A DNA stretch of 36,065 bases from Bigelowiella natans CCMP2755 (lineage: Eukaryota; Protista; Cercozoa). Location: contig ADNK01002374.1 of NCBI GenBank assembly GCA_000320545.1, positions 1 through 36,065 of the forward strand, in the 5' to 3' direction. Shown one piece after another: positions 2,867 through 22,128 of this stretch; within the stretch, counting starts at the first letter, position 1, and each line of letters starts with the position of its first letter. A program made the translations under genes and the position numbers. The notes below the pieces were generated by a model that was given only the letters and a program-made list of their open reading frames with translations, was not told the DNA's origin and made no database searches.

Positions 2867-5664
2867 ATGCATACTATCCCCATGTACCTCTGGATCCTAT
2901 TTTCAGCTTCCACTACAGCTTTTGGCAGCGGAAATGCGATTGGCCGAAAGAGCAATTGTTACTCGTATAAACGTGGAGTGGCGAGCTTCTCTCGGATAGT
3001 ACAAACGCCCAAGACCTTAAGGCGGAGGAGAGTATATATGAACGAATTGGGGGTTCACACCCAGCACCGGGACATAAATTTGGCTAGAATATATGGACAT
3101 TCATCATTAAGCAGACTGCATGCTGTGAAGGACCAGCCGGAAGCAGAGGGGATTGATAGACAATCATCTCTGCAGTCACTTAACTCAAGTATGGGCATTT
3201 TTGAGCAAGTAATTGACATGGTACGAGATACAGTGGAGCTCAGCTACCAGAGATTCTACAGCGCCATCGATGGGGGTTCTACTGGGTTTGCAAAATATTC
3301 ATATTATTCGTCTAAAATACGATAACATGTTCGATTCTTGCTAACTCCCTGCCAGGTGGTCGGATTGGGTTGACGACGTCTCTCGTAAAGAGCTTCTCCA
3401 AACTATAAAACGTGTAGGGATCGACAAAGACGCTTCAATGCTATGGGAGTGGTGCCATGATTCGCCATATGTCACCACCCTTGAGCTGGCAAAAGGGAAA
3501 GGCTTTGAGGCACGTGTGTTAGTCGTTCCTGATGGTACTCGAATGACCCGACACTATCCACCTGGTTGCATGATGATGTCCACTGTACTCCATGGAGCTT
3601 GCAGTGTGCGTTCGTACATTACATCAACACGCCAAGGCTCGAATGTAACCAGGGAAACTGCATACCACAAGTAAGACTACGATTATGATTAAAAACTCAC
3701 AGCTCTCAGAGGTTGTTGACCACGTGAAAACACACATTGCTTTTTCGGTTGATGATAATCCACAAACTCATCCACTTCCCTGTTTCTATCTTTCCTCCTG
3801 ATTAGATATAACGTAAAGTCAAACCCTTGGGTATACTATGGAGGACCTCAACGTGTGATTAAGGCGTCAGGAAAGGCTGACGTCGCTGTGATTTTGGAGA
3901 TTACGCTAATGCCCCCGGCAAGGCTTAGCCCAATTTACAAGCAACATACAACAGGTAGTTGCTGTAGCAGTTGTTGCCTAAGTTGAAGAAAGAAGAGGAA
4001 GAAGAAGATGATGTTATGAGCGGGAATTAGGCGGATGAGTAGGAGAGGACGAGAAGGAGTAAGAGTACATTTTACTAAAGCTACACCTATTCCGTGCTTG
4101 ACTATCTTTGTGATATCACCATCTTCTTCTTCATCATCATTATCATCATCATCGTTATCATCATCATCATTATCGTTCTCTCGTAGGCCTTCGGATCTTA
4201 CCGGTAGACAACTCGAGCCGTGCCTTGGGGAAGATGTTCAGGGAGATAAGGGTTATCAATCAAACGGCAGCAGGATCAACAGCGACAACGGATACTAGAG
4301 GCGATGATGATGATACCACAGCTTTCAGCATCCAAGATACTAGGTTATTTGTACATACAACGAGGTTTAATATTATCATGCTTTCCTTGATTTTTGCTGT
4401 TTTTCCACTAGGATGCGGGTTGGGGGACTGGATGATGCATTAGTTAATATCACAAGGAGGATTTTCGCAACGAGGAGATTTCCTCCGCGTACCATTGAGA
4501 AACTGGGCCTCCAACATGTCCGCGGCATGCTTCTGGTCTATATGATAACCGAAGAATATGAACCGAAGAAGATACATATGGCACTTAGTATTACCACCAA
4601 CAACGCCATCACCATCATCACCAATATCATCATTATCATCATCACCATCATCAACCATCCTCCTCCTCATCATCACCATTCAAATTTTCATCAGTATGGA
4701 CCACCTGGATGCGGAAAGACATTGCTTGCTCGCGAAATAGCTACAGCTTTGAACGCTCGTAAACCTAAAATTGTGAGCGGGCCAGAGATCCTGAATAAGT
4801 GGGTCGGAGAGGCGGAGAAATCCATACGAGGGTAGTAAGAATAAGAGAACACGTGATTGTATGTTTCCTACCTACTTGTGATTCGTCAAATTTTGGTCTG
4901 CACACGAGCACCTCATCTTTGGTTTTGTCACTTGCAGGTTATTTGTGGAAGCGGAGCGAGAACAACGGGAGAAAGGGCGAGAAAGCAAGCTTCATGTCGT
5001 CATTCTAGATGAGATGGATGCGGTGTGTAAAGTGCGGGGCTCTGTGAGTGACGGCGGGGTTCGTGACTCCGTGGTGAATCAGCTGCTTGCCAAGCTTGAT
5101 GGTGTTGACCAACTGCACAACCTGCTGGTGATCGGTCTTACGAACAGAAGGGAGCTTATCGACCCAGCACTTCTGAGACCTGGCCGCCTCGAAGTGCAGA
5201 TGTACGTGGGGCTGCCTAACACGAAAGCGCGTCAGGAGATCCTGAACGTCCACCTCTCTGCCATTATCCGCAACGGATTCGCCACGGACGATGCAATCGA
5301 GATGTTTCAGTCGGGTACAATCTCGGAGAGCACCAAAGGCTTCTCTGGTGCTGAGCTCGCTGGCCTCGTCCGCAGCGCTATGTCATTTGCTATCATGCGA
5401 GCAGAATCCAGCGATGAGCTGCAACTTACGGCAGAAGACCTAAAGAAGGCATTGGCGGAGTTGGAAGCCTCGCATGATAGGTTTGGTGCTGCAGGAGGAG
5501 AGCACAGTGGACAGCAACGGCCCTCTTTAATGAGGCGGATAGTTAACTTGCTTGGTCGTCGCAAGACATCATCAACGTCTAACGATGGCAGGGATGAAGA
5601 TCATTTAAGGCTGCATGATATGAAGGAAGATCGTCAGGCCTCGACGTCGGTTAGCGTGCCGTAA
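2867..5664 (+). CDS. NSF/Sec18-like single-domain AAA+ ATPase with a targeting-like leader and a degenerate cupin (PCO/ADO-like) domain, ~675 aa
   Basis: Exons 2867-3285, 3356-3670, 3806-3954, 4187-4343, 4412-4535, 4695-4831, 4938-5664 (2028 nt, phases consistent). The C-terminal half matches NSF D1: [23 protein letters not shown]...[56 protein letters not shown], Walker [11 protein letters not shown], and [21 protein letters not shown]. No D2 domain follows. Confidence 0.9.
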
Positions 5665-10747: not shown

Positions 10748-13245
10748 ATGGCGAAGAAAAAGCGCGGAAACAAAGGGAAACGTGCCAAAGGAGGCAAGGG
10801 AAAGAAATTTGATGAGGTAGGAGATTGCGTCCTAAATTCGAAGCATTCGCTGTTTAGATGTAGTAATCAGAGGGCTTAAAAGCAACTGGGCTACCGTCTG
10901 GGAGTGATTTCGCGACGAAATGATAATTTCATTTTCAATTTTTCTAATACACCACCTTTGCATTGATTCTTGCATGTGACTCCTTTTGCTTTGGCCTATC
11001 ATCGATAGACGAAGAAGGTATTTGGAAACACCGAAGACGACTATGAGAAAGTGGAAAAAGTGCCTCTCTATCTGGTTGATGACATGGCTTCCATTAACAG
11101 GGTAATGTAGTCATCCTGTAGAAAGTGATACTTTTACTCATCTTGAAGAATTCGAAGTCTTTACATTGTTTTTGGAAGCGAAAATATTCGTGGCAACATG
11201 AAGCATAAGAATATGTGTACTGTTCGATGGCAGGACGTCGTGGTGGAGGGCCTCGATATGGTGGAGCCAGGAAGTGGGAAGCTACTGCTGGCTAAAACCC
11301 GTTTAAAACTCTCAAGAGGCCGTCGCTACGGACTTTGTGGAAAGAATGGTAGACGTACATGGCATGTTGTGACATCGAGGAGTTTGTGGACATCTTATTC
11401 TGTTGATGTTCGGTTCTCAGGAATTGGAAAGACCACCCTCCTTAAGTTGGTAGCTTCGGGAAACCTCAAAGAATTTCCTTCGCACCTCAAAGTACTCCAT
11501 GTGCGACAAGAGGTACGCGCAAAACGGCATCCCCCTCTAAAATGCGTTTGCTATGACTGAATCTGATATTGAAGATTCATTCTCATTGTGTGTAGGTTCC
11601 ATGTGATGACCGAAAAGTGGTCCAGTTTGTCTCAGAATGTGATGAGGAATTTAAGTTCCTTCAGGAGGAGGAAGAAAGGTTGTTAGATTATGCACGAAGC
11701 AGGGCTCTTTCATGTATGACTGGCCTTGAGAGTCTTGTGTGTTTTGTTGCGATTACTTACTTTACTTACTATGGTGCAGAATGTACGATCTGCTTGAAGA
11801 CGAAGATGCGGACATTGATTTCGATCCACAGGAGAGACTGGAAAAGATAGAGCAACGACGAAGGGTTGTAGACACATTTATTATTGTCATTAGCTAATAC
11901 TTACTTGTCCAGTTGATCGTGAACGCATATCTTCTTCATCATGATCATCGTCATTATCATCATTCATGCAGGACATTGGGGTAGATACCGCTCAAGCACG
12001 CGCCACGCACATTGTCATGGGTCTTGGTTTCACGAAAGAAATGCGGGAAAAGGTAATTATTTGAGGATGATACAATAAAGAATCTTGCCTACACACACAA
12101 ACACACACACACACACACACACACACATTCTCACCTATATTCTTAGTTACATATACATACCATCGATATATCTAGGCTATATTTAAAATTGCTGAGGATG
12201 CCCTCTGCATATACTTTCTTTCTTTACTGAATACTCTACTCTTATATATACACATGCACATAAATAAATATAAAATCATCATTCTCAGAAAACACAAGAT
12301 CTTTCGGGGGGGTGGCGTTGCCGTGTTGCTCTGGCATGTGCCCTCTTCATTGCCCCAGACTTGCTGCTCCTTGACGAGCCTACTAACCACCTTGATTTCC
12401 CCGGAGTAACCTGGCTCGAAAACTACCTAAAGAAGTACGAAAAGACCGCGATTATAGTTTCACACGACAAGACGTTTCTCAACACAGTCAGCTCAGACAT
12501 CATTCATATCGAAGATCGAAAGCTCAACTACTATAAGGGCAACTACAAGACCTTTGAGAAGGTGCGCGCAGAGCACCGCCGCGCACAGGAGAAGGAGCAC
12601 GAGTCACAACAACTTCGAATCAGGCAGATGAAAGAATTTATCAACCGATACCGTAGCGATGAGAGTAAGGCTTCCCTCGTGCAAAGCCGAGTAAAGGAGC
12701 TCGAGAAGATGGAGAGAGAGGGTCTCGCGGAGGAGGTAAAGGAGGAGAAGAAACTATCGTTCCGCTTTCCCTTACCAACTAAACTAGATCACGACATTGC
12801 GCGTATTATTGATATGGATTTCGGGTACGATCCGAAGAAGATCATCCTGCACAAAGTAAACTTTAACGTTACGATGAAGGACCGCGTTGGTGTTTTGGGC
12901 GTAAATGGCTGCGGCAAGTCGACGCTGCTGAAGCTCATTCTGGAGATGCTTAAGCCAACCGCAGGAAAGCTTGAGTTCAATCGCCATGCACGTGTTGCTT
13001 ATTTCACGCAGCACCACATGGATCTTCTTGACCCGAATCTTACTCCTGTGGAATTCCTGCAGCAAAAATTCAAGGAGGACAACATCAAGACTCATGAGGC
13101 AAGAGGGCACCTCGGAAAGTTTGCGCTAAGTGGGGACCTGCAGCTGCAGCCTATTGGCTTGCTTTCCGGAGGTAAACAACAACAACAACAACATAATGAA
13201 CAATTAATATCTACCTGCAACACCAAATATGATGACCGAGGCCAG

Positions 13246-13279
<34 letters not shown>

Positions 13280-15682: not shown

Positions 15683-16520
15683 GTATTATCCATATAATCA
15701 TCTAGGACGTTAACATGTTTAAGCACAGGCTTGTGCCTGTGTGTCGTACATCTATATTCAATACGCTCGATGCGGGGCATGCATGTCTTCGAAATGCATG
15801 TACGAGCATACGCAGCAATCGAAGTGTGCATCGCAGGACTATCGTCATGATACATCGCTAGATCGCACTAGCGATGCCATAATCACATCGACTACATTAT
15901 TACGCATCAGTGCTATATATGAATACGGCTGCGCATATATCTTGAAAGCATATACTTTTATAGATATACTTACATTATACCACATGGCACAATACAGCCT
16001 TATATACACGTATCTGTGCCACTAATCTAGTAATAGATTTATATCTAGCTATCTAGCTATACATGGCAGTCAGCCTTGATGAGTAGTAGAATAGCCAACA
16101 TGTGCATCATATGATTCATTGTCGCGCACACAATAACAATATTGCTTTTACAATAATGTGAAACATGTATGTTATTGCAGAAAGCAACAAACACAATTTA
16201 AGCGCTGTAGCCGAGCTGTGCACAGCTACGTTATTTTGCTTAAAATGACTATGATTGAAAAAATGTAATCATTTCATTACATCCGTCTCATAGTATCTAG
16301 ATGATATATATTTCGTATTACGTGTACAACTATCTACTAGATCTAGACAGAGCAGTAGGCTACGTCGTCGTCTTGTTATGGCTATTCTATGATATATTAT
16401 ACATGTATATCAAGAGCTACATGTGCTATATGCATAAATACATTATATACCCTCGCACAGTCTAAAAGAGCGTCTAACTTTGCCTCGAAGTATCACTCAT
16501 AAACGACGAGTTGTAATTTA

Positions 16521-17571
16521 CTATAACAAATCGGCCCAATTTTTCCCGGGAGGGGAGGTATACGTTAGTTGAATATTGAATTCGTTGTCAATCTAACAAC
16601 AACAGATACACCAAAAAAGTGGCAGAATATCACTTAGAATCATCTCACAGTGGAATATTGTAAAGCAAGTAACATAGTTTCCCTCACCTTTGGGTCTCGA
16701 AATACCCCATCTAAGTCAGACTTTCTTAATAAAAATTGGCCTAAAGGAATCGACGATAGCAGAGTATAAAATGAGGGAGGATGCTAAGAATAAGGGTTTC
16801 TATGAAGGAATCTGCAACACAGCATTTGACTTCACAATGCAAGAATTCTCACGCACCGCTCTTGAAGAGGAAAGCTGTGTGCACCCAAAATTCGCAGAAA
16901 GCCTTTGCTCCTGGGTGATCTGTAGAGATGGTCATTATTGGTAACATTGCATTTTGTTGGAATTTTAATTTATTCAGCACGCAAAGATCTCACACACCAT
17001 AAATATTGACTGGGTAGACTTGGAACCGAACGTCACCGGTGAGGCGTAGAGTTGAGCTTTTCTTCTCCCATGATTTGATATTAAAGGACACGCCGTCCCT
17101 CCGCACTGTATAAACGAAAACGAAAACAAAAATAGCAACACATACACAGTGAACGACAATATGCAAATATCGATCATATTCTATGTTCTTATTTCTCTGT
17201 ATTACGATCAAATCCTGAGCCTACTGCCTCAGCGGAGAACGTGTAGCTCTTTTTATCTTCCCTGCCCAGCTTGGGATTGTACCAGTAGTTGCTTACCATC
17301 TAAGAAAGAAAAGAAAGAAGAACAATTAACGAGGAGGAGGAGAAGAAACCTCGGATCTTATAACCAACCCAACAAGAAATAATCTTCATGCTTCTCTAAA
17401 TTGCAGACCACATTATAATCCAGACGACGACGACAGAAAGTACCAATGTCCAACCCAGCAGCGAATTATCAGATTTTGGGTCTTGGACACCCTTTGATCG
17501 AGCTACAGCATCCATTCACTCATTAGTCGATACCACCGTGTCAACTTAGAGTAGATCCTCTCCCCCCCCCC

Positions 17572-17616
<45 letters not shown>

Positions 17617-18029
17617 ACCTGCAAGCCATCGATGAGATACGTTAATATTGTACAGATTCAAACGCTTAAACTTGCCTAATAGTGATGCATTGATTCATTC
17701 AATCATTCATAGAACACAGCACACCTCACACTCCTTCCAATGGAGCAACGAAATATAGAGACTACTCCGTATCTTTTCTAGGTAAATATCGAAGAAACAT
17801 GCTGCTACATTCGTCGATTGTCTTTATCATTACATCGTTCTCCTAAGTGAGATAATTTTTCCATGGTAATCTTTGCGTCAAGATCACGAATCTTCTCCCA
17901 GTATTCCACATACCGTCTCTGATGAATCATTAGGGTGTATTATCGTATATACCATGCATAAATAAATAAACAAGTAAGCATTATATACACCGCCACTATC
18001 AAACATGCTGCGTTGTGAAGACTAGTATC

Positions 18030-18063
<34 letters not shown>

Positions 18064-18250
18064 TCTCACTAGCATCAGCACCTGGCTAGGCCCATCCACG
18101 CCTACACGCTTGGCTTGCGATACGTCGTCTTCTGTTCTCATTACAGCGAAGCGGGTTAACGCCTTCTCAGCGTAATAATCTTTGTGCTGTATGTGGCCAC
18201 GTCGCGCGTCGGCACACAACACCCACACACAACACCCACACCCACACACA

Positions 18251-18306
<56 letters not shown>

Positions 18307-18481
18307 GGGGAATCAAGAATGAACAATAGTAGCTGACACTCTTCTTATGTTGTTTCTATTATTATTTATCTCAAGTAGAGATACTGGCGTTATCCCTTCC
18401 TCGGAGAATGTCGAATGTCATATCATCATCATCATCATCATCATCATCATTATTCATAAAAATGACGATAATATCATCCAC

Positions 18482-18525
<44 letters not shown>

Positions 18526-18800
18526 ATACAAATTCATAGCTACTATTTTCCTTTTCTGCTAATACGCGAATACGTCTGCTACTACTAGTGCTAGTAGGAC
18601 GATAACTACTATTACTACTACAACAACAACTACTACTACAACAACCAGTTTAAGCAGAATGGAGGCCGTGACTACTCCAGTCCTTCCTTTACCACCCTTA
18701 CAGTGTATCGCGACAACATTCTTTTTGTCCTCTGTTAGAAATTCGCTGCGTGTGGCCAAAACTTGTATGAGGACTTACTTCAATGGGTGGCACGTGGATG

Positions 18801-18837
<37 letters not shown>

Positions 18838-20498
18838 GTCGTCATAGATACCATAAACTCATCTATGAGATAGTTTCCAGTACTTGGTACTACATACAAA
18901 AGCCATAACCTGGTTAAACTACGTCACCTTGCTTCATTGCAGAGCCTGACGAGCAAGCTCAATGGCGGAGGATTATGATCATCGAAGCCAAAGCGCCTTA
19001 CTCGGCCGTGGAAACCATCTTCGGGGTAATCTCTCTCTTCGCAGAGGTTGTATATCCTGTACTTCTCAGGATGACGTGTGTTGAAGAATTTTGTGACTTG
19101 TTTTAGAGGGTTTCGGTAGAGTCCCTCGTACTTTACAGATGGCAGCCCCATAGCAATCACCTGGGGTTCTGAGTCATGGTTATCAAGATGAATCGTAAAT
19201 CATAAACAACACCACTTACTGGCATTAACGTCTGTCATCATCATCATCATCATCATTGCTGCACCCTTCCTTCTTCATACTGGCCTACCTATATAAGTCA
19301 AATCCAGGTCAAATCCACCGCCGATAAAACGCCTTTTACGCCCCCCCACAAGGCGCCGAGCTCCTTTGAGAAGCCCAATGTATCCGATATAGATGCGTAC
19401 CACAATGCGCGCTGGAACAAAAGGCAAAACATCCGTCAGATCATGGTGATATACGCACACAACAAACACACATAGACAGCATACGTCTCCTCGGCGATCT
19501 TCTATAACTCCCAGACTACGACGACGACGATAATGAGTGACTCCTATGGTGATGATGACGATGATGACCAAGATGTAATGGCATGATGCACAGACCGAAA
19601 CTGACGCTCAATTGGACGATAAGGTTTGCGGATACGGGAAGGGTTCCAGGAAATGCCGTTGAAACTTCCACCGCGATTGCAGCAATGAGGAGGAGAGCAT
19701 CCAGAGAGTACCATTTAACGTTGCCTGAGGAAACAAGAAACGAGGGAGAGCCAGATGAAAGAGAAGTATCAGCAATCAATGATACATGAAAGAAAACTTA
19801 GGCGACAGATGGTTCAATTATTAATTAGAAGCGATTGTCTACCCGCACGATACTCGTCGGGCCAGTTGTAAATACAAATCCTACAACCAAACCAAAAGGA
19901 AGGCGGCGATGATTCCGTTAACGAAGAATTGCAACTTATTGTAAATAAAACTGAATTCGGTAATCTACATCATGCACTGAGAAACCTGAGGAGCAGTTCA
20001 AAGACAAAGTATACGTGTAATCCATAGCCGACGTATGTCTCTATGGGCGTTTCTCCGATCACGAACAACTCAAGCAAAATCAGCGCTGCCCACGCCAACA
20101 AAGCCAAGATTACCACTGTAAACATACATAGGAGGAAGGGAGCACGAAGAAGAAAAAATTATGCCAAAATCTTGTGAGAGAGTTAATTAAAGAAGAGGAT
20201 ACTGACCTACATTGTACCATACAGCCTCCAAAATAGCTCCACTGCATGCTTCCCTACAGCCGCTGAAATGGATAAAGTGACCCAAATATAAATTTTATAA
20301 TGGAATCTTTGCTCCTCCTCCTCCATAGTCTTCACTACCCAACAACTACATCCCATATCTATACCGGTATGATCAATAATAATGATACCCTTTCGCAGCT
20401 TGCTCCTTGGGTACGGCTAGGTGGGTTTCTGATCTCTCTAGATCCGGAAGATCATTCGGAAGATCAACCACATTCTCTTTCAACTCAAAATCCTCCAT
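16521..20498 (-). CDS. VSP: Voltage-sensing phosphatase-like protein (VSP/TPTE type: 4-TM sensor domain + PTEN-like phosphatase + C2), ~540 aa
   Basis: 17 phase-consistent minus-strand exons: 20498-20389, 20262-20207, 20115-19986, 19880-19843, 19724-19596, 19411-19289, 19168-18928, 18745-18646, 18186-18082, 17918-17834, 17675-17619, 17502-17444, 17299-17206, 17105-16998, 16919-16857, 16740-16688, 16592-16521. A possible extra 5' exon lies at 20727-20643, splicing to 20512. S1 VVVILALLAWAALILLELF; S2 YVGYGLHVYFVFELLLR; S3 WYSLDALLLIAAIAVEV; S4 LIVQLSVSFARIVVRIY; linker ARRLVGGRKRRFIGGGFDLDLTYI. Phosphatase motifs YRNP, YNLC, FDDHNPP, active site HCKGGKGRTG, GVDGPSQRRYV. C2 motifs LTGDVRF, FCEFWVHT, LRKSDLD. 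Confidence 0.93.
18243..18303. repeat. Compound (CA)n(GA)n microsatellite, intronic
   Basis: Directly visible in the VSP intron 18187-18645, which also holds (ATC)n and (TC)n runs. Confidence 0.95.
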
Positions 20499-22128
20499 TT
20501 CAAATATGTCACCTGTATAGCACCAGACTCTTTAGAATTATTTATTTTACATATATAACTATACTATAACTCAGTTTGTAGTCTGATCATTGATATCTAA
20601 CAGCTGTCAGGGAAATATTTGGTTTATCAGCCCAGATAACACCACGTGCCGCTTGTAGTCTAGTGACATATTCTTTAGAAACCCGCACTTTCTCTTTGTC
20701 ATGACACATATGGGAACTTGCATTCATCTTCCTCGCAGCAAAGAATCACCATTCATTCCAAATTATACTCGGAATAATTAATATTGCTGCTGATATAAAT
20801 TCTCAGCCGCCATGCAAGCAACCAAAGCTATTTGCTGCAGAGAAACACAGCAGTAGTCCTACATTGCCCATATGGACAAACTCTAAATCTGTTTGTTTCT
20901 GGGTATTGGTTCACCTTGAATGCGCTATTCACCTACACTCGCTCTCCAACGCGAGGATGAGGCTTGAGATTGATTTTCAGTTGGGAGGTTTTGCTTAACC
21001 GGTCTCTCCTCTCTCGTTCCCCCCTCCCTCCTTTTTTTTCGTCGGGGCTGCCGTCCCAAACTTCAAATACAGTGAGGTATGTGTAACTTGGTGTACCAAA
21101 CTTATGATCGCTAAATCGATGCTATTTTGTAAATACGTCTTGATAATTGTCATGTCGTACCAACGATAAATCATGCAAATTTGTTTCGGCGCACATGGTT
21201 GCCCGTTATTGTGGTCTGGGAGTGATCAAGAGCCATTTGATCAAGAGGAGCTACTCCAAAATTGAGTTCTTTCATCATAATTTTTAGGTCGCACATATTT
21301 CCCCCCCTTTATTTTTTCCTAGTATTTTAATCAACTTGTCCTTTTTATTCTGGATTGTTCGTTTTGCAACGGAAATCCTTCGTTAAATTGAAAGTCAACA
21401 GGGAAATGCCCCAAAATACCAGGAATAATCGGCCAAAATATAGATCTAGCTACCGTCGTCATCTGAAGACTGTGCAGATGCTTTTGTGATGGCTACTGGA
21501 GTTCCCTACCTGGTCTAAAAATAGATCAAAAGTTACCGATGCTTGTTGTCACAGCAGCACTTTGGAATTGTTGTCGCACTGTTTAAAGGAGGGCAACTAG
21601 ACATCATCTTCACAGAACTCCTTCCCTTCTTCGAATCTATCGGCTCCCAGCTTGCCTCTACGCCCAACTCGATTTTGAACTGCTCATACAGGAACTGCTT
21701 CCCATAAATCCCATACATGTAGATGTAATGCTAATTGTTGTCTTTATGCGACAACCATTCTATGCGGCTTCTTTGCGATTTTACGATAGTCGCAAAATAT
21801 GAATGTGTAGATTTATGCTGAACTGATACTTGAGAGTTGATGAAAGACTTTTTGGTGCCTACGACAAAGATAAGGAAATTATTGAGGTAAAAAACAGCAT
21901 GATTCTGCGGATGTTGGGAGAACCTTGAGATACAAAAGTCTGAAATTTGCTACAAAATGGTGGATTCTGAGCACCGTTTACACACAGGGCACTTTCATCA
22001 ATCTTGGTCCTGATCTAAGTTGATTTGGAGGCTTCCAGCCATTCCATTTGCTAGATAAGGTAATCTCTATTATAGCTACCATACTAGCAGCTGGAATTCC
22101 TATCTAAATTTACTGCATTCATCCCAAG

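What the first reader, a model, noticed from the sequence alone, without database searches (positions are those of the whole stretch)
16521..20498. Complete voltage-sensing phosphatase architecture in an apparently non-animal protist
Seen: hidden across 17 small exons is a full S1-S4 + basic linker + PTEN phosphatase + C2 protein; the ORF track shows only fragments. Known: VSP/TPTE is characterised from animals and close holozoan relatives, whereas other eukaryotes typically have soluble PTENs. Inference: if the host is an alga or rhizarian, as the gene style and plastid-type leader suggest, this indicates deep ancestry, horizontal transfer or independent fusion. It would imply membrane-coupled phosphoinositide signalling in that lineage. 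The many host-style introns argue against contamination.
Basis: partly seen in the sequence, partly recalled or inferred. Interest (0 to 1): 0.85.

Follow-up and report, generated by a model that had tools for sequence, protein, structure and literature searches.

The report
Voltage-sensing phosphatase gene in a rhizarian alga
The chlorarachniophyte alga Bigelowiella natans expresses a 17-exon gene for a protein built like the animal voltage-sensing phosphatases, which suggests that direct coupling of a membrane voltage sensor to lipid signalling is much older than animals and their closest relatives.

Summary
On the minus strand, 20498..16521, 17 coding exons with 16 GT-AG introns encode a 540-aa protein. 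Every exon matches a stored Bigelowiella natans protein (P0273, JGI model Bigna1 90093, also an MMETSP transcript). Marine metatranscriptome contigs show the splice junctions, and 3' RNA tags show a poly(A) site near 16254.

The protein has a four-helix domain, a basic linker (RKRRF), a PTEN-type phosphatase and a C2 domain. The four-helix domain is a diverged voltage-sensor domain. No single-sequence search detects this. It is shown by profile comparisons through other protist relatives, by a confident AlphaFold model resembling the Ci-VSP sensor, and by the ESM Atlas.

In a tree built from the phosphatase domain alone, all 22 sensor-bearing proteins group together (100/94). The P-loop reads HCKGGKGRTG in all 21 scorable sensor-bearing proteins and HCKAGKGRTG in all 78 scorable others. 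Independent fusion is therefore unlikely. Ancient inheritance and old gene transfer cannot be told apart.

The main caveat is that S4 carries only two membrane arginines (R156, R160, spaced i/i+4), so voltage control is inferred, not shown. I found no paper describing such proteins outside animals and choanoflagellates, although the gene model has long been public.

The parts
20915..21035 (-). Non-coding 5' exon (5' UTR). Its upstream end is approximate. It is followed by a 402-nt GT-AG intron (20914-20513).
   Evidence: Loose ends of the metatranscriptome contigs beyond 20514 map uniquely to 20917-20940. The exon contains no ATG when read.
20389..20512 (-). Coding exon 1. ATG at 20498. Residues 1-37, an acidic cytoplasmic N-terminal tail.
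   Evidence: Identical to P0273 residues 1-36. Junction 20262|20389 seen.
20207..20262 (-). Coding exon 2. Residues 37-56: pre-S1 helix and the start of S1.
   Evidence: Helices placed from the models.
19986..20115 (-). Coding exon 3. Residues 56-99: S1 and S2, including the S2 motif F92-x-x-E95-x-x-x-R99.
   Evidence: Invariant columns.
19843..19880 (-). Coding exon 4. Residues 99-112: the S2-S3 loop (ICIYNWPDEYRAG).
   Evidence: A contig loose end before 19985 equals 19868-19880. Frame read. GT-AG boundaries read in the sequence.
19596..19724 (-). Coding exon 5. Residues 112-155: S3 with D120, the S3-S4 loop and the start of S4.
   Evidence: (junction 19411|19596).
19289..19411 (-). Coding exon 6. 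Residues 155-196: S4 arginines R156 and R160, the basic linker KGARRLVGGRKRRF, and GFDLDLTYI.
   Evidence: Its best PDB match is the linker of a VSP entry (9c49).
18928..19168 (-). Coding exon 7. Residues 196-276: the N-terminal half of the phosphatase domain, including the DDHNPP loop.
   Evidence: PDB matches to PTEN and Ci-VSP at E about 2e-20..
18646..18745 (-). Coding exon 8. Residues 276-309: the catalytic P-loop H290-C291-K-G293-G-K-G-R297-T-G.
   Evidence: Pfam phosphatase families. The P-loop is identical to that of Ci-VSP.
18082..18186 (-). Coding exon 9. Residues 310-344: the helix and the 'TI-loop' region (GVDGPSQ).
17834..17918 (-). Coding exon 10. Residues 345-373: the end of the phosphatase domain.
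   Evidence: (junction at 17674/5|17833/4).
17619..17675 (-). Coding exon 11. Residues 373-392: the start of the C2 domain.
   Evidence: The boundary follows from contig arithmetic and from GT-AG.
17444..17502 (-). Coding exon 12. Residues 392-411: a C2 loop.
   Evidence: (17299|17444). The intron that follows is retained in MMETSP isoform P0153.
17206..17299 (-). Coding exon 13. Residues 412-443: C2 strands.
16998..17105 (-). Coding exon 14. Residues 443-479: C2 domain.
   Evidence: Pfam PTEN_C2 at residues 461-527.
16857..16919 (-). Coding exon 15. Residues 479-500: C2 domain.
16688..16740 (-). Coding exon 16. Residues 500-517: C2 domain.
16521..16592 (-). Coding exon 17. Residues 518-540 and the stop codon (16521-16523).
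16254..16520 (-). 3' UTR, ending at a poly(A) site near 16254.
   Evidence: Raw RNA reads of the same species pile up at 16234-16567 and carry T-run loose ends before 16254.

Best explanation
[quoted passage not shown] The protein has three working parts.
- A four-helix voltage-sensor-type domain (about residues 50-170) sits in a membrane.
- Its S4 helix runs on into a basic linker (KGARRLVGGRKRRF).
- The linker holds a PTEN-like phosphoinositide phosphatase (residues 187 to about 355, catalytic C291 and R297) and a C2 domain (about 375-530) against the inner leaflet.

By analogy with Ci-VSP, movement of S4 would be passed through the linker and switch the phosphatase on. The enzyme would then remove phosphate from PI(4,5)P2 and/or PI(3,4,5)P3.

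Shown here: the gene structure, its expression, the domain architecture, homology of each domain, and placement in the VSP clade. Inferred: that the sensor moves with voltage (it has only two buried arginines), the substrate, and the membrane in which the protein sits.
For: Gene model and transcript.

Phosphatase and C2:
- The best PDB sequence hit is Ci-VSP 3awe (E 1.6e-47), with PTEN at 1e-46.
- Pfam PTEN_C2 scores 27.8 bits against a cut-off of 27.1.
- The full-length AlphaFold model has pLDDT 85.6 and pTM 0.84. Its top Foldseek hit is Ci-VSP 241-576 (E 5e-25, TM by target 0.82).

Sensor domain:
- hhalign of the chlorarachniophyte domain (A1) against other protist TM-PTEN domains (A3) gives probability 97.9%, E 5.5e-13, over S1-S4.
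- A3 against holozoan VSP sensors (A2) gives 98.9%, E 3e-17.
- Several A3 members pass the Pfam Ion_trans cut-off.
- The best PDB hits of the A3 profile are the Ci-VSP sensor domain, 4g80 and 4g7v (E 1.6e-14 and 1.2e-13).
- The model of residues 30-200 has pLDDT 82.4. By VIA-align, 48 of the top 50 entries are voltage-sensor domains, and Ci-VSP 4g7v scores Z 11.2, rmsd 3.6 A over 127 residues.
- The ESM Atlas model of residues 30-380 matches a chordate TPTE2 cluster with TM 0.82.

Conserved residues in all seven chlorarachniophyte sequences: F92, E95 and R99 (S2), D120 (S3), R156 and R160 (S4).

Family signature: the fourth P-loop residue is Gly in 21/21 scorable sensor-bearing proteins and Ala in 78/78 scorable others.

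Tree of the phosphatase domain only:
- All 22 sensor-bearing rows fall on one side of a branch (UFBoot 100, SH-aLRT 94).
- With the P-loop and TI-loop columns removed, the tree that holds them together is 47.7 log-likelihood units better than the free quick tree (p-AU 0.906).

Cellular context: the genome has many voltage-gated-channel-type Ion_trans loci and several PIP5K loci.
Against: S4 has only two arginines inside the membrane span, spaced i/i+4. Animal VSPs have three to four at every third position.

Pfam Ion_trans does not detect the B. natans domain itself. Direct comparison with holozoan sensors is weak: hhalign probability 51%, and the A1 profile hits only two Hv1 chains in the PDB at E about 0.7. 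Foldseek E-values for the sensor model are not significant. A Z of about 11 is within the range that unrelated helical bundles can reach (note).

No functional measurement exists. The substrate is inferred from a glycine whose role is itself debated (PMC4322731). The 'TI-loop' residues (DG) differ from both PTEN (TI) and animal VSPs (ET/QT).
Confidence: 0.62

Rival explanations
1. The four-helix domain descends from a voltage sensor but no longer senses voltage. It would serve as a permanent membrane anchor that keeps a PTEN-like phosphatase at a membrane, with the enzyme constitutively active or regulated by other means.
For: Only two S4 arginines, with irregular spacing. Some members of the sister protist group keep only one. 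No single-sequence method recognises the domain as a sensor.
Against: Two arginines in mid-membrane (R156, R160) and the acidic and aromatic partners of the charge-transfer centre (F92, E95, D120) are invariant across the chlorarachniophytes. This is costly to keep in a plain anchor. The S4-linker-phosphatase junction is conserved with animal VSPs.
Confidence: 0.27
2. The architecture arose independently in Rhizaria, by fusion of an unrelated sensor-type domain to a local PTEN paralogue. It would then be a look-alike of VSPs, not a relative.
For: The B. natans genome holds several other PTEN-like paralogues that could have served as fusion partners. The first quick tree without the active-site columns did not recover one group.
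Against: The phosphatase-only tree groups all sensor-bearing proteins at 100/94. The constrained tree is better than the free quick tree even without the active-site columns. The P-loop glycine is shared by 21/21 sensor-bearing proteins against 0/78 others. The sister protist sensors match the Ci-VSP sensor better than any channel in the PDB.
Confidence: 0.05
3. The sensor-type domain itself conducts protons or ions, like Hv1, and the phosphatase is secondary.
For: The only PDB hits of the chlorarachniophyte profile A1 are two Hv1 constructs, at E about 0.7.
Against: S4 lacks the Hv1-type run of three arginines with tryptophan, as read in the sequence. The catalytic residues and C2 domain of the phosphatase are fully conserved.
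Confidence: 0.04
4. The gene is a contaminant or an assembly or annotation artefact. For example, an animal VSP might have been carried into the assembly.
For: None found.
Against: It has sixteen short host-style introns and a spliced 5' leader. It is identical to the JGI B. natans model and to MMETSP culture transcripts. Fourteen DNA runs of the same species label hold 86-96% of the sampled words. The nearest relatives are other chlorarachniophytes, at 57-70% identity in the sensor.
Confidence: 0.01

Closest known systems
Ci-VSP / vertebrate VSP (TPTE, TPTE2)
   Same: The order of parts is the same: S1-S4 domain, basic linker ending in KRR[FY] before GFDLDLTY, PTEN-like phosphatase with P-loop HCKGGKGRTG, and C2 domain. 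Ci-VSP is the best PDB hit by sequence and by fold. The two share a clade in the phosphatase tree.
   Different: S4 has two arginines (ARIVVRIY) against three to four at every third position. The TI-loop reads DG against ET/QT. Sensor identity to animal VSPs is only about 20-28%, and the domain falls below the Pfam Ion_trans threshold. The host is a rhizarian alga.
Choanoflagellate VSPs (Monosiga brevicollis in PMC3440755; Craspedida sp. UC1, P0279 here)
   Same: They are unicellular hosts with the same architecture and the same P-loop glycine.
   Different: The choanoflagellate protein groups with animal VSPs. It has a canonical arginine-rich S4 and a clear Ion_trans match of 47 bits.
Paulinella chromatophora P0155 and unnamed environmental TM-PTEN proteins (P0025, P0052, P0058, P0060, P0100)
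   Same: They are the nearest non-chlorarachniophyte relatives, forming a clade with 99/92 support. They share the S4 pattern R-x-x-x-R or a single R, a glycine as the second TI-loop residue (DG here; SG, GG or AG in them), and the linker ARxxV..NK.RY.
   Different: Several of them pass the Pfam Ion_trans cut-off. Many are much longer (860-1080 aa) and sit in intron-poor contigs of unknown organisms.
PTEN (soluble)
   Same: It has the same phosphatase fold and C2 domain, the N-terminal KRRY-GFDLDLTYI motif and the catalytic Cys and Arg.
   Different: PTEN has no transmembrane domain. Its P-loop is HCKAGKGRTG and its TI-loop is TI.
Hv1 voltage-gated proton channel
   Same: It is a stand-alone four-helix sensor fold and gives weak profile hits.
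   Different: Hv1 has no enzyme domain. Its S4 signature is absent here.

Membership tests
Voltage-sensing phosphatase (VSP/TPTE) | N-terminal four-helix domain homologous to the S1-S4 voltage-sensor domain | tested here: met
   hhalign chain A1-A3 97.9% and A3-A2 98.9%. A3 members pass Pfam Ion_trans. The AlphaFold model matches the Ci-VSP sensor at Z 11.2, rmsd 3.6 A. ESM Atlas TM 0.82 to TPTE2. The direct A1-A2 comparison is weak (51%).
Voltage-sensing phosphatase (VSP/TPTE) | S4 with three or more basic residues at every third position | tested here: not met
   Only R156 and R160 lie in the membrane span, spaced i/i+4. Holozoan VSPs show an RxxRxxR-type S4.
Voltage-sensing phosphatase (VSP/TPTE) | Charge-transfer centre: S2 motif [FYW]xx[ED]xxx[RK] and an S3 aspartate | tested here: met
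   F92-x-x-E95-x-x-x-R99 and D120 are invariant in seven chlorarachniophyte sequences. The motif is as defined in PMC4878010.
Voltage-sensing phosphatase (VSP/TPTE) | Basic phosphoinositide-binding linker between S4 and the phosphatase | tested here: met
   KGARRLVGGRKRRFIGGGFDLDLTYI. The best PDB match of this exon is the linker of a VSP entry, 9c49. K180 and R182 are invariant in 35 sequences.
Voltage-sensing phosphatase (VSP/TPTE) | PTEN-like CX5R phosphatase with the VSP-type P-loop glycine (HCKGGKGRTG) | tested here: met
   The P-loop is identical to that of Ci-VSP. Gly in 21/21 scorable sensor-bearing proteins against Ala in 78/78 scorable others.
Voltage-sensing phosphatase (VSP/TPTE) | C-terminal PTEN-type C2 domain | tested here: met
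   Pfam PF10409 scores 27.8 bits against a cut-off of 27.1. Foldseek to Ci-VSP 241-576 covers the phosphatase and C2.
Voltage-sensing phosphatase (VSP/TPTE) | Phosphatase domain groups with known VSPs and not with PTENs | tested here: met
   100/94 for the group of all 22 sensor-bearing rows. The result is robust to removal of the active-site columns under a constrained search. The tree is unrooted, and the sampling was biased towards hits of this protein.
Voltage-sensing phosphatase (VSP/TPTE) | Phosphatase activity controlled by membrane potential | not testable with these tools
   This needs electrophysiology with phosphoinositide reporters.
PTEN (soluble tumour-suppressor type) | No transmembrane domain; P-loop HCKAGKGRTG; TI-loop Thr-Ile | tested here: not met
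   A four-helix membrane domain lies upstream. The P-loop has Gly and the TI-loop reads DG.
Hv1 proton channel | Stand-alone sensor with an RxWRxxR-type S4 and no enzyme domain | tested here: not met
   The S4 sequence is ARIVVRIYIGY, and the domain is fused to a phosphatase and a C2 domain.

The most novel reading that the evidence does not exclude
The sensor-phosphatase fusion predates the split between the lineage leading to animals and the one leading to Rhizaria, close to the last common ancestor of eukaryotes, and was lost many times. Chlorarachniophytes, Paulinella and a set of unnamed marine protists would then still convert membrane voltage directly into phosphoinositide changes. They would do so with a minimal S4 carrying only two arginines spaced i/i+4, a natural low-charge voltage sensor.
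Probability: 0.35. Interest if true: 0.78.

Novelty: new variant of a known kind. Interest (0 to 1): 0.62.

Why it matters
The papers I could search treat VSPs as proteins of animals and choanoflagellates. A VSP-clade gene that is expressed in a culturable, genome-sequenced rhizarian alga moves the origin of direct voltage-to-lipid coupling far back in eukaryote history. The alternative is an old transfer of the whole gene.

It also gives an easy experimental handle. The cDNA can be expressed in oocytes to ask whether a sensor with only two arginines still moves with voltage. The result would bear on how few charges a working voltage sensor needs and on what phosphoinositide signalling looks like in Rhizaria. 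It might also offer new sensor domains for voltage indicators.

Tried and rejected
**Searches that gave nothing**
- Pfam and PDB searches of the transmembrane exons, run exon by exon, gave nothing useful.
- A word-indexed search with the sensor region alone found only the close family.
- Foldseek on the sensor model gave no significant E-value, although the hit list was almost all voltage sensors.
- Rfam and tRNA scans of the window were empty.
- The search of earlier findings had nothing, by place or by words.
- Literature searches for VSPs in protists, algae, Bigelowiella or Rhizaria found only animal and choanoflagellate reports. One paper I wanted (Sutton et al. 2012) is not held.

**Leads examined and dropped**
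- Hanusia phi P0318 looked like a cryptophyte VSP because it carries both Ion_trans and PTEN domains. I rejected it: it has no sensor next to its phosphatase, and its P-loop is the PTEN type.
- A quick tree without the P-loop and TI-loop columns split the sensor-bearing rows into two neighbouring groups. The constrained search then found a better tree with them together, so the split came from the short search.
- I could not name the organisms behind the unnamed protist relatives. The contigs are metagenomic and the Atlas gave no taxa.
- The 'plastid-type leader' is not in this gene.

- I did not send a typed, joined spliced model to any search. Exons were searched by reference, and the full-length work used stored database proteins.
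- No sensor-domain tree against Hv1, TMEM266 or channels was built, because I had no stored sequences of those families and no protein search left.
Full report
**Working limits**

The spliced model was searched exon by exon, by reference. I did not type or join exon letters into a model for any search, so that joined step is left out. For full-length work I used proteins that the databases returned under their own ids, chiefly P0273, after checking that every exon of the window encodes exactly the matching part of it. Read laying was given 5,001 letters.

**1.

Translating the minus strand of 16400-20600 gives open pieces that read like a PTEN phosphatase preceded by hydrophobic helices.
- The largest exon (18928-19168) hits PTEN and Ci-VSP in the PDB at E about 2e-20.
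- The next exon carries HCKGGKGRTG and matches Pfam phosphatase families.
- The exon before them carries a basic stretch and GFDLDLTYI. Its best PDB match is the S4-phosphatase linker of a VSP entry, 9c49.
- The hydrophobic exons alone match nothing.

**2. Transcript evidence**

Public runs that hold the stretch fall into three sets:
- fourteen DNA runs of one species label, holding 86-96% of the sampled words;
- six marine or seawater metatranscriptome runs, holding 9-26% (the exons);
- one raw RNA run of the species.

Laying four of the runs on 15900-20900 gave twelve skips, all with CT..AC ends, which is GT..AG on the minus strand. Two loose ends define two further junctions. One runs from 19985/6 to 19880. 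The other runs from the exon holding the ATG to a non-coding exon at 20917-20940 and beyond.

One 1181-nt contig joins the C2 domain, the phosphatase, the linker, S4 and part of S3. Another joins S1-S2, the N-terminus and the 5' exon. The raw reads are 3' tags. They pile up at 16234-16567 and carry T-run ends before 16254, which marks a poly(A) site on the minus strand.

**3. Organism and full-length protein**

A full-library search with the phosphatase exon found relatives at 77-100% identity that carry about 200 extra N-terminal residues. Cluster look-ups named the sources:
- Amorphochlora amoebiformis (P0265);
- Norrisiella sphaerica (P0262);
- for the 100% cluster, Bigelowiella natans (P0273, 540 aa, EukProt EP00466_P011752, which is JGI Bigna1 90093 and also an MMETSP transcript).

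Fifteen exons with fixed ends each translate to an exact substring of P0273. The other two read identically. The final model has 17 coding exons summing to 1623 nt. All 16 introns are GT-AG once the ends of exons 3 and 4 are placed at 19986 and 19843 (and reading of the sequence).

The window's genome is 91.4 Mb in 3736 contigs. The host is therefore a chlorarachniophyte, which is both an alga and a rhizarian, not a holozoan. MMETSP isoforms P0153 and P0271 end in retained introns.

**4. Phosphatase and C2 domains**
- P0273 residues 176-540 hit Ci-VSP 3awe at E 1.6e-47 and PTEN at 1e-46. The P-loop is identical to that of Ci-VSP (HCKGGKGRTG); PTEN has HCKAGKGRTG.
- Pfam finds PTEN_C2 just over its cut-off, 27.8 against 27.1 bits.
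- A full-length AlphaFold model built on 35 sequences has pLDDT 85.6 and pTM 0.84.
- Its top Foldseek hits are Ci-VSP 241-576, at E 5e-25 and TM by target 0.82.

**5. Is the four-helix domain a voltage-sensor domain?**

Direct evidence is weak.
- Pfam gives no hit.
- hhalign of seven chlorarachniophyte domains (A1) against nine holozoan VSP sensors (A2) gives only 51% probability, E 1.5e-4, over S1-S3.
- The A1 profile finds just two PDB chains, both Hv1 sensors, at E about 0.7.

Indirect evidence is strong.
- Other protist proteins found in the same searches have a transmembrane domain before the same linker. These are Paulinella chromatophora P0155 and the unnamed P0016, P0025, P0052, P0054, P0058, P0060, P0082 and P0100.
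- P0155, P0025, P0052 and P0100 pass the Pfam Ion_trans cut-off, and P0016 does so.
- Their alignment (A3) matches A1 at 97.9%, E 5.5e-13, over 122 columns spanning S1-S4. It matches A2 at 98.9%, E 3e-17.
- The best PDB hits of the A3 profile are the Ci-VSP sensor domain (4g80 at E 1.6e-14, 4g7v at 1.2e-13), ahead of every channel and of Hv1.

Structure agrees.
- The model of residues 30-200 has pLDDT 82.4 and shows four long helices, with S4 running on into the linker.
- Foldseek E-values are not significant, but the list is nearly all sensor domains.
- By VIA-align, 48 of the top 50 entries are voltage sensors at Z 10.3-12. Ci-VSP 4g7v scores Z 11.2, rmsd 3.6 A over 127 of 136 residues. The tool warns that Z below about 13 can arise between unrelated helical bundles.
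- The ESM Atlas's own model of residues 30-380 aligns to a chordate TPTE2 cluster at TM 0.82 over 345 residues, that is, sensor and phosphatase together.

I conclude that the domain is a diverged voltage-sensor-type domain.

**6. What the sensor keeps and what it lacks**

Invariant in all seven chlorarachniophyte sequences are F92, E95 and R99 in S2 (the [FYW]xx[ED]xxx[RK] motif of PMC4878010), D120 in S3, and R156 and R160 in S4.

R160 aligns with an arginine that is invariant in all 25 sequences of the joint alignment. R156 sits one position off the usual three-residue rhythm. The outer two S4 positions, which are arginines in animal VSPs, are uncharged here.

The same R-x-x-x-R pattern, or a single R, is found across the sister protist group. 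Keeping buried charges with their partners argues for a working electrostatic device. The low charge count means that voltage sensitivity cannot be assumed.

**7. Evolution**

I cut the phosphatase domain only (178 residues from GFDLDLTY) out of 103 proteins, after thinning at 75% identity. I labelled each one by whether its upstream sequence matches a sensor HMM.

The careful tree put all 22 sensor-bearing rows on one side of a branch, with UFBoot 100, SH-aLRT 94 and 100% of 200 bootstrap trees. Within that group there were two subgroups:
- a protist group of six chlorarachniophytes, Paulinella and five unnamed proteins (99/92);
- a holozoan group.

The fourth P-loop residue is Gly in 21/21 scorable sensor-bearing rows and Ala in 78/78 scorable others. 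The TI-loop is TI in 70 of the 71 scorable others, ET or QT in the holozoan VSPs, and DG, SG, GG or AG in the protists.

These columns could be convergent, so I removed them. A quick free search then split the sensor-bearing rows into two neighbouring groups, with five other rows between them on weak branches. The search that held them together found a tree 47.7 log-likelihood units better, with p-AU 0.906.

Independent fusion is therefore unlikely. The tree is unrooted, and the non-sensor rows were sampled by likeness to this protein. Ancient origin with many losses and an old transfer of the whole gene therefore remain open. Reciprocal grouping of the two subclades and the sixteen host-style introns argue against a recent transfer from animals.

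**8. Breadth**

A search from P0025 found more unnamed sensor-PTEN proteins. Some have a canonical arginine-rich S4 (P0306, P0315, P0371). One is close to the Paulinella protein (P0317).

Hanusia phi P0318 is not one of them. It has no sensor next to its phosphatase, and its P-loop has Ala.

The named non-holozoan hosts are thus all Rhizaria. The other relatives come from metagenomic contigs that I could not assign to an organism.

**9. Cellular context**

The B. natans genome holds many Ion_trans loci, including several multi-repeat voltage-gated-channel genes, and several PIP5K loci. Both changing membrane potentials and PI(4,5)P2 are therefore plausible in this cell.

Other PTEN-like paralogues exist in the genome. 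The S1-S3 exons match only this locus.

**10. Literature**

[quoted passage not shown] They are also described for choanoflagellates (Monosiga in PMC3440755; PMC12223298). I found nothing on Rhizaria or other non-holozoan protists. Most subscription journals are not covered.

The role of the P-loop glycine is discussed in PMC4322731. G365A lowers the activity of Ci-VSP on PI(3,4,5)P3 and PI(4,5)P2, but it does not by itself convert the enzyme to PTEN's specificity.

**Verdict**

This is a real, expressed, VSP-family gene in a rhizarian alga, with a charge-poor S4. It is a new variant of a known kind. It is interesting mainly for what it says about the age of the fusion, and as a natural minimal sensor.

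Noticed in passing
window 20444 (minus-strand coding exon 1): All three marine metatranscriptome contigs carry a 12-nt in-frame insertion (CGGAAGATCATT on the + strand) after 20444. It adds one more NDLP repeat to the acidic N-terminal tail. This looks like a strain or population polymorphism.
   Followed up: partly
window 16741-16859: Two metatranscriptome runs show a second junction, 16741|16859, with non-canonical TA..CG ends and one extra letter, beside the canonical junction one to two bases away. It may be an alternative splice, a variant or an assembly artefact.
   Followed up: no
window 17300-17443 and 16920-16997: MMETSP isoforms P0153 and P0271 read through these two introns and end early, which is intron retention in culture transcriptomes.
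   Followed up: partly
window 17555-17623, 18017-18074, 18219-18315, 18486-18522: The introns of this gene hold long microsatellites: (CT)n, (CAT)n and (CA)n(GA)n. Reads were skipped at these places.
   Followed up: no
window 4413-5664 (+) and 11198-13248 (+): By eye, the ORF pieces read like an NSF/AAA-type ATPase and an ABCF-type ABC ATPase. They would be neighbouring multi-exon genes. I ran no search on them.
   Followed up: no
G000 contigs C3040:104244-104855, C2525:12401-12949, C3310:195232-195759, C2326:6340-6852: The same genome has several other PTEN-like paralogues, 39-49% identical over the phosphatase, lying in long open frames of 367-746 aa. This contrasts with the 17-exon VSP gene. 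No S1-S3 match lies next to them.
   Followed up: partly
proteins P0306, P0315, P0371 (JGI, Logan and ENA environmental sequences): These unnamed sensor-PTEN proteins, up to 1500 aa long, have a canonical arginine-rich S4 (for example ARIIRFLRILKFGRRLRK). P0306 and P0315 have the VSP-type P-loop. Their organisms are unknown.
   Followed up: partly
protein P0318 (EukProt, Hanusia phi): This cryptophyte protein has a Pfam Ion_trans domain and a PTEN-type phosphatase with an Ala P-loop. No sensor adjoins the phosphatase, so it is either a different architecture or a chimeric model.
   Followed up: partly
G000 contigs C3708:156562-162119, C1679:117923-125172, C3151, C3424, C3642: These are multi-repeat Ion_trans loci. 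Some sit in open frames of up to 1681 aa and look like four-domain voltage-gated cation channels in B. natans.
   Followed up: no
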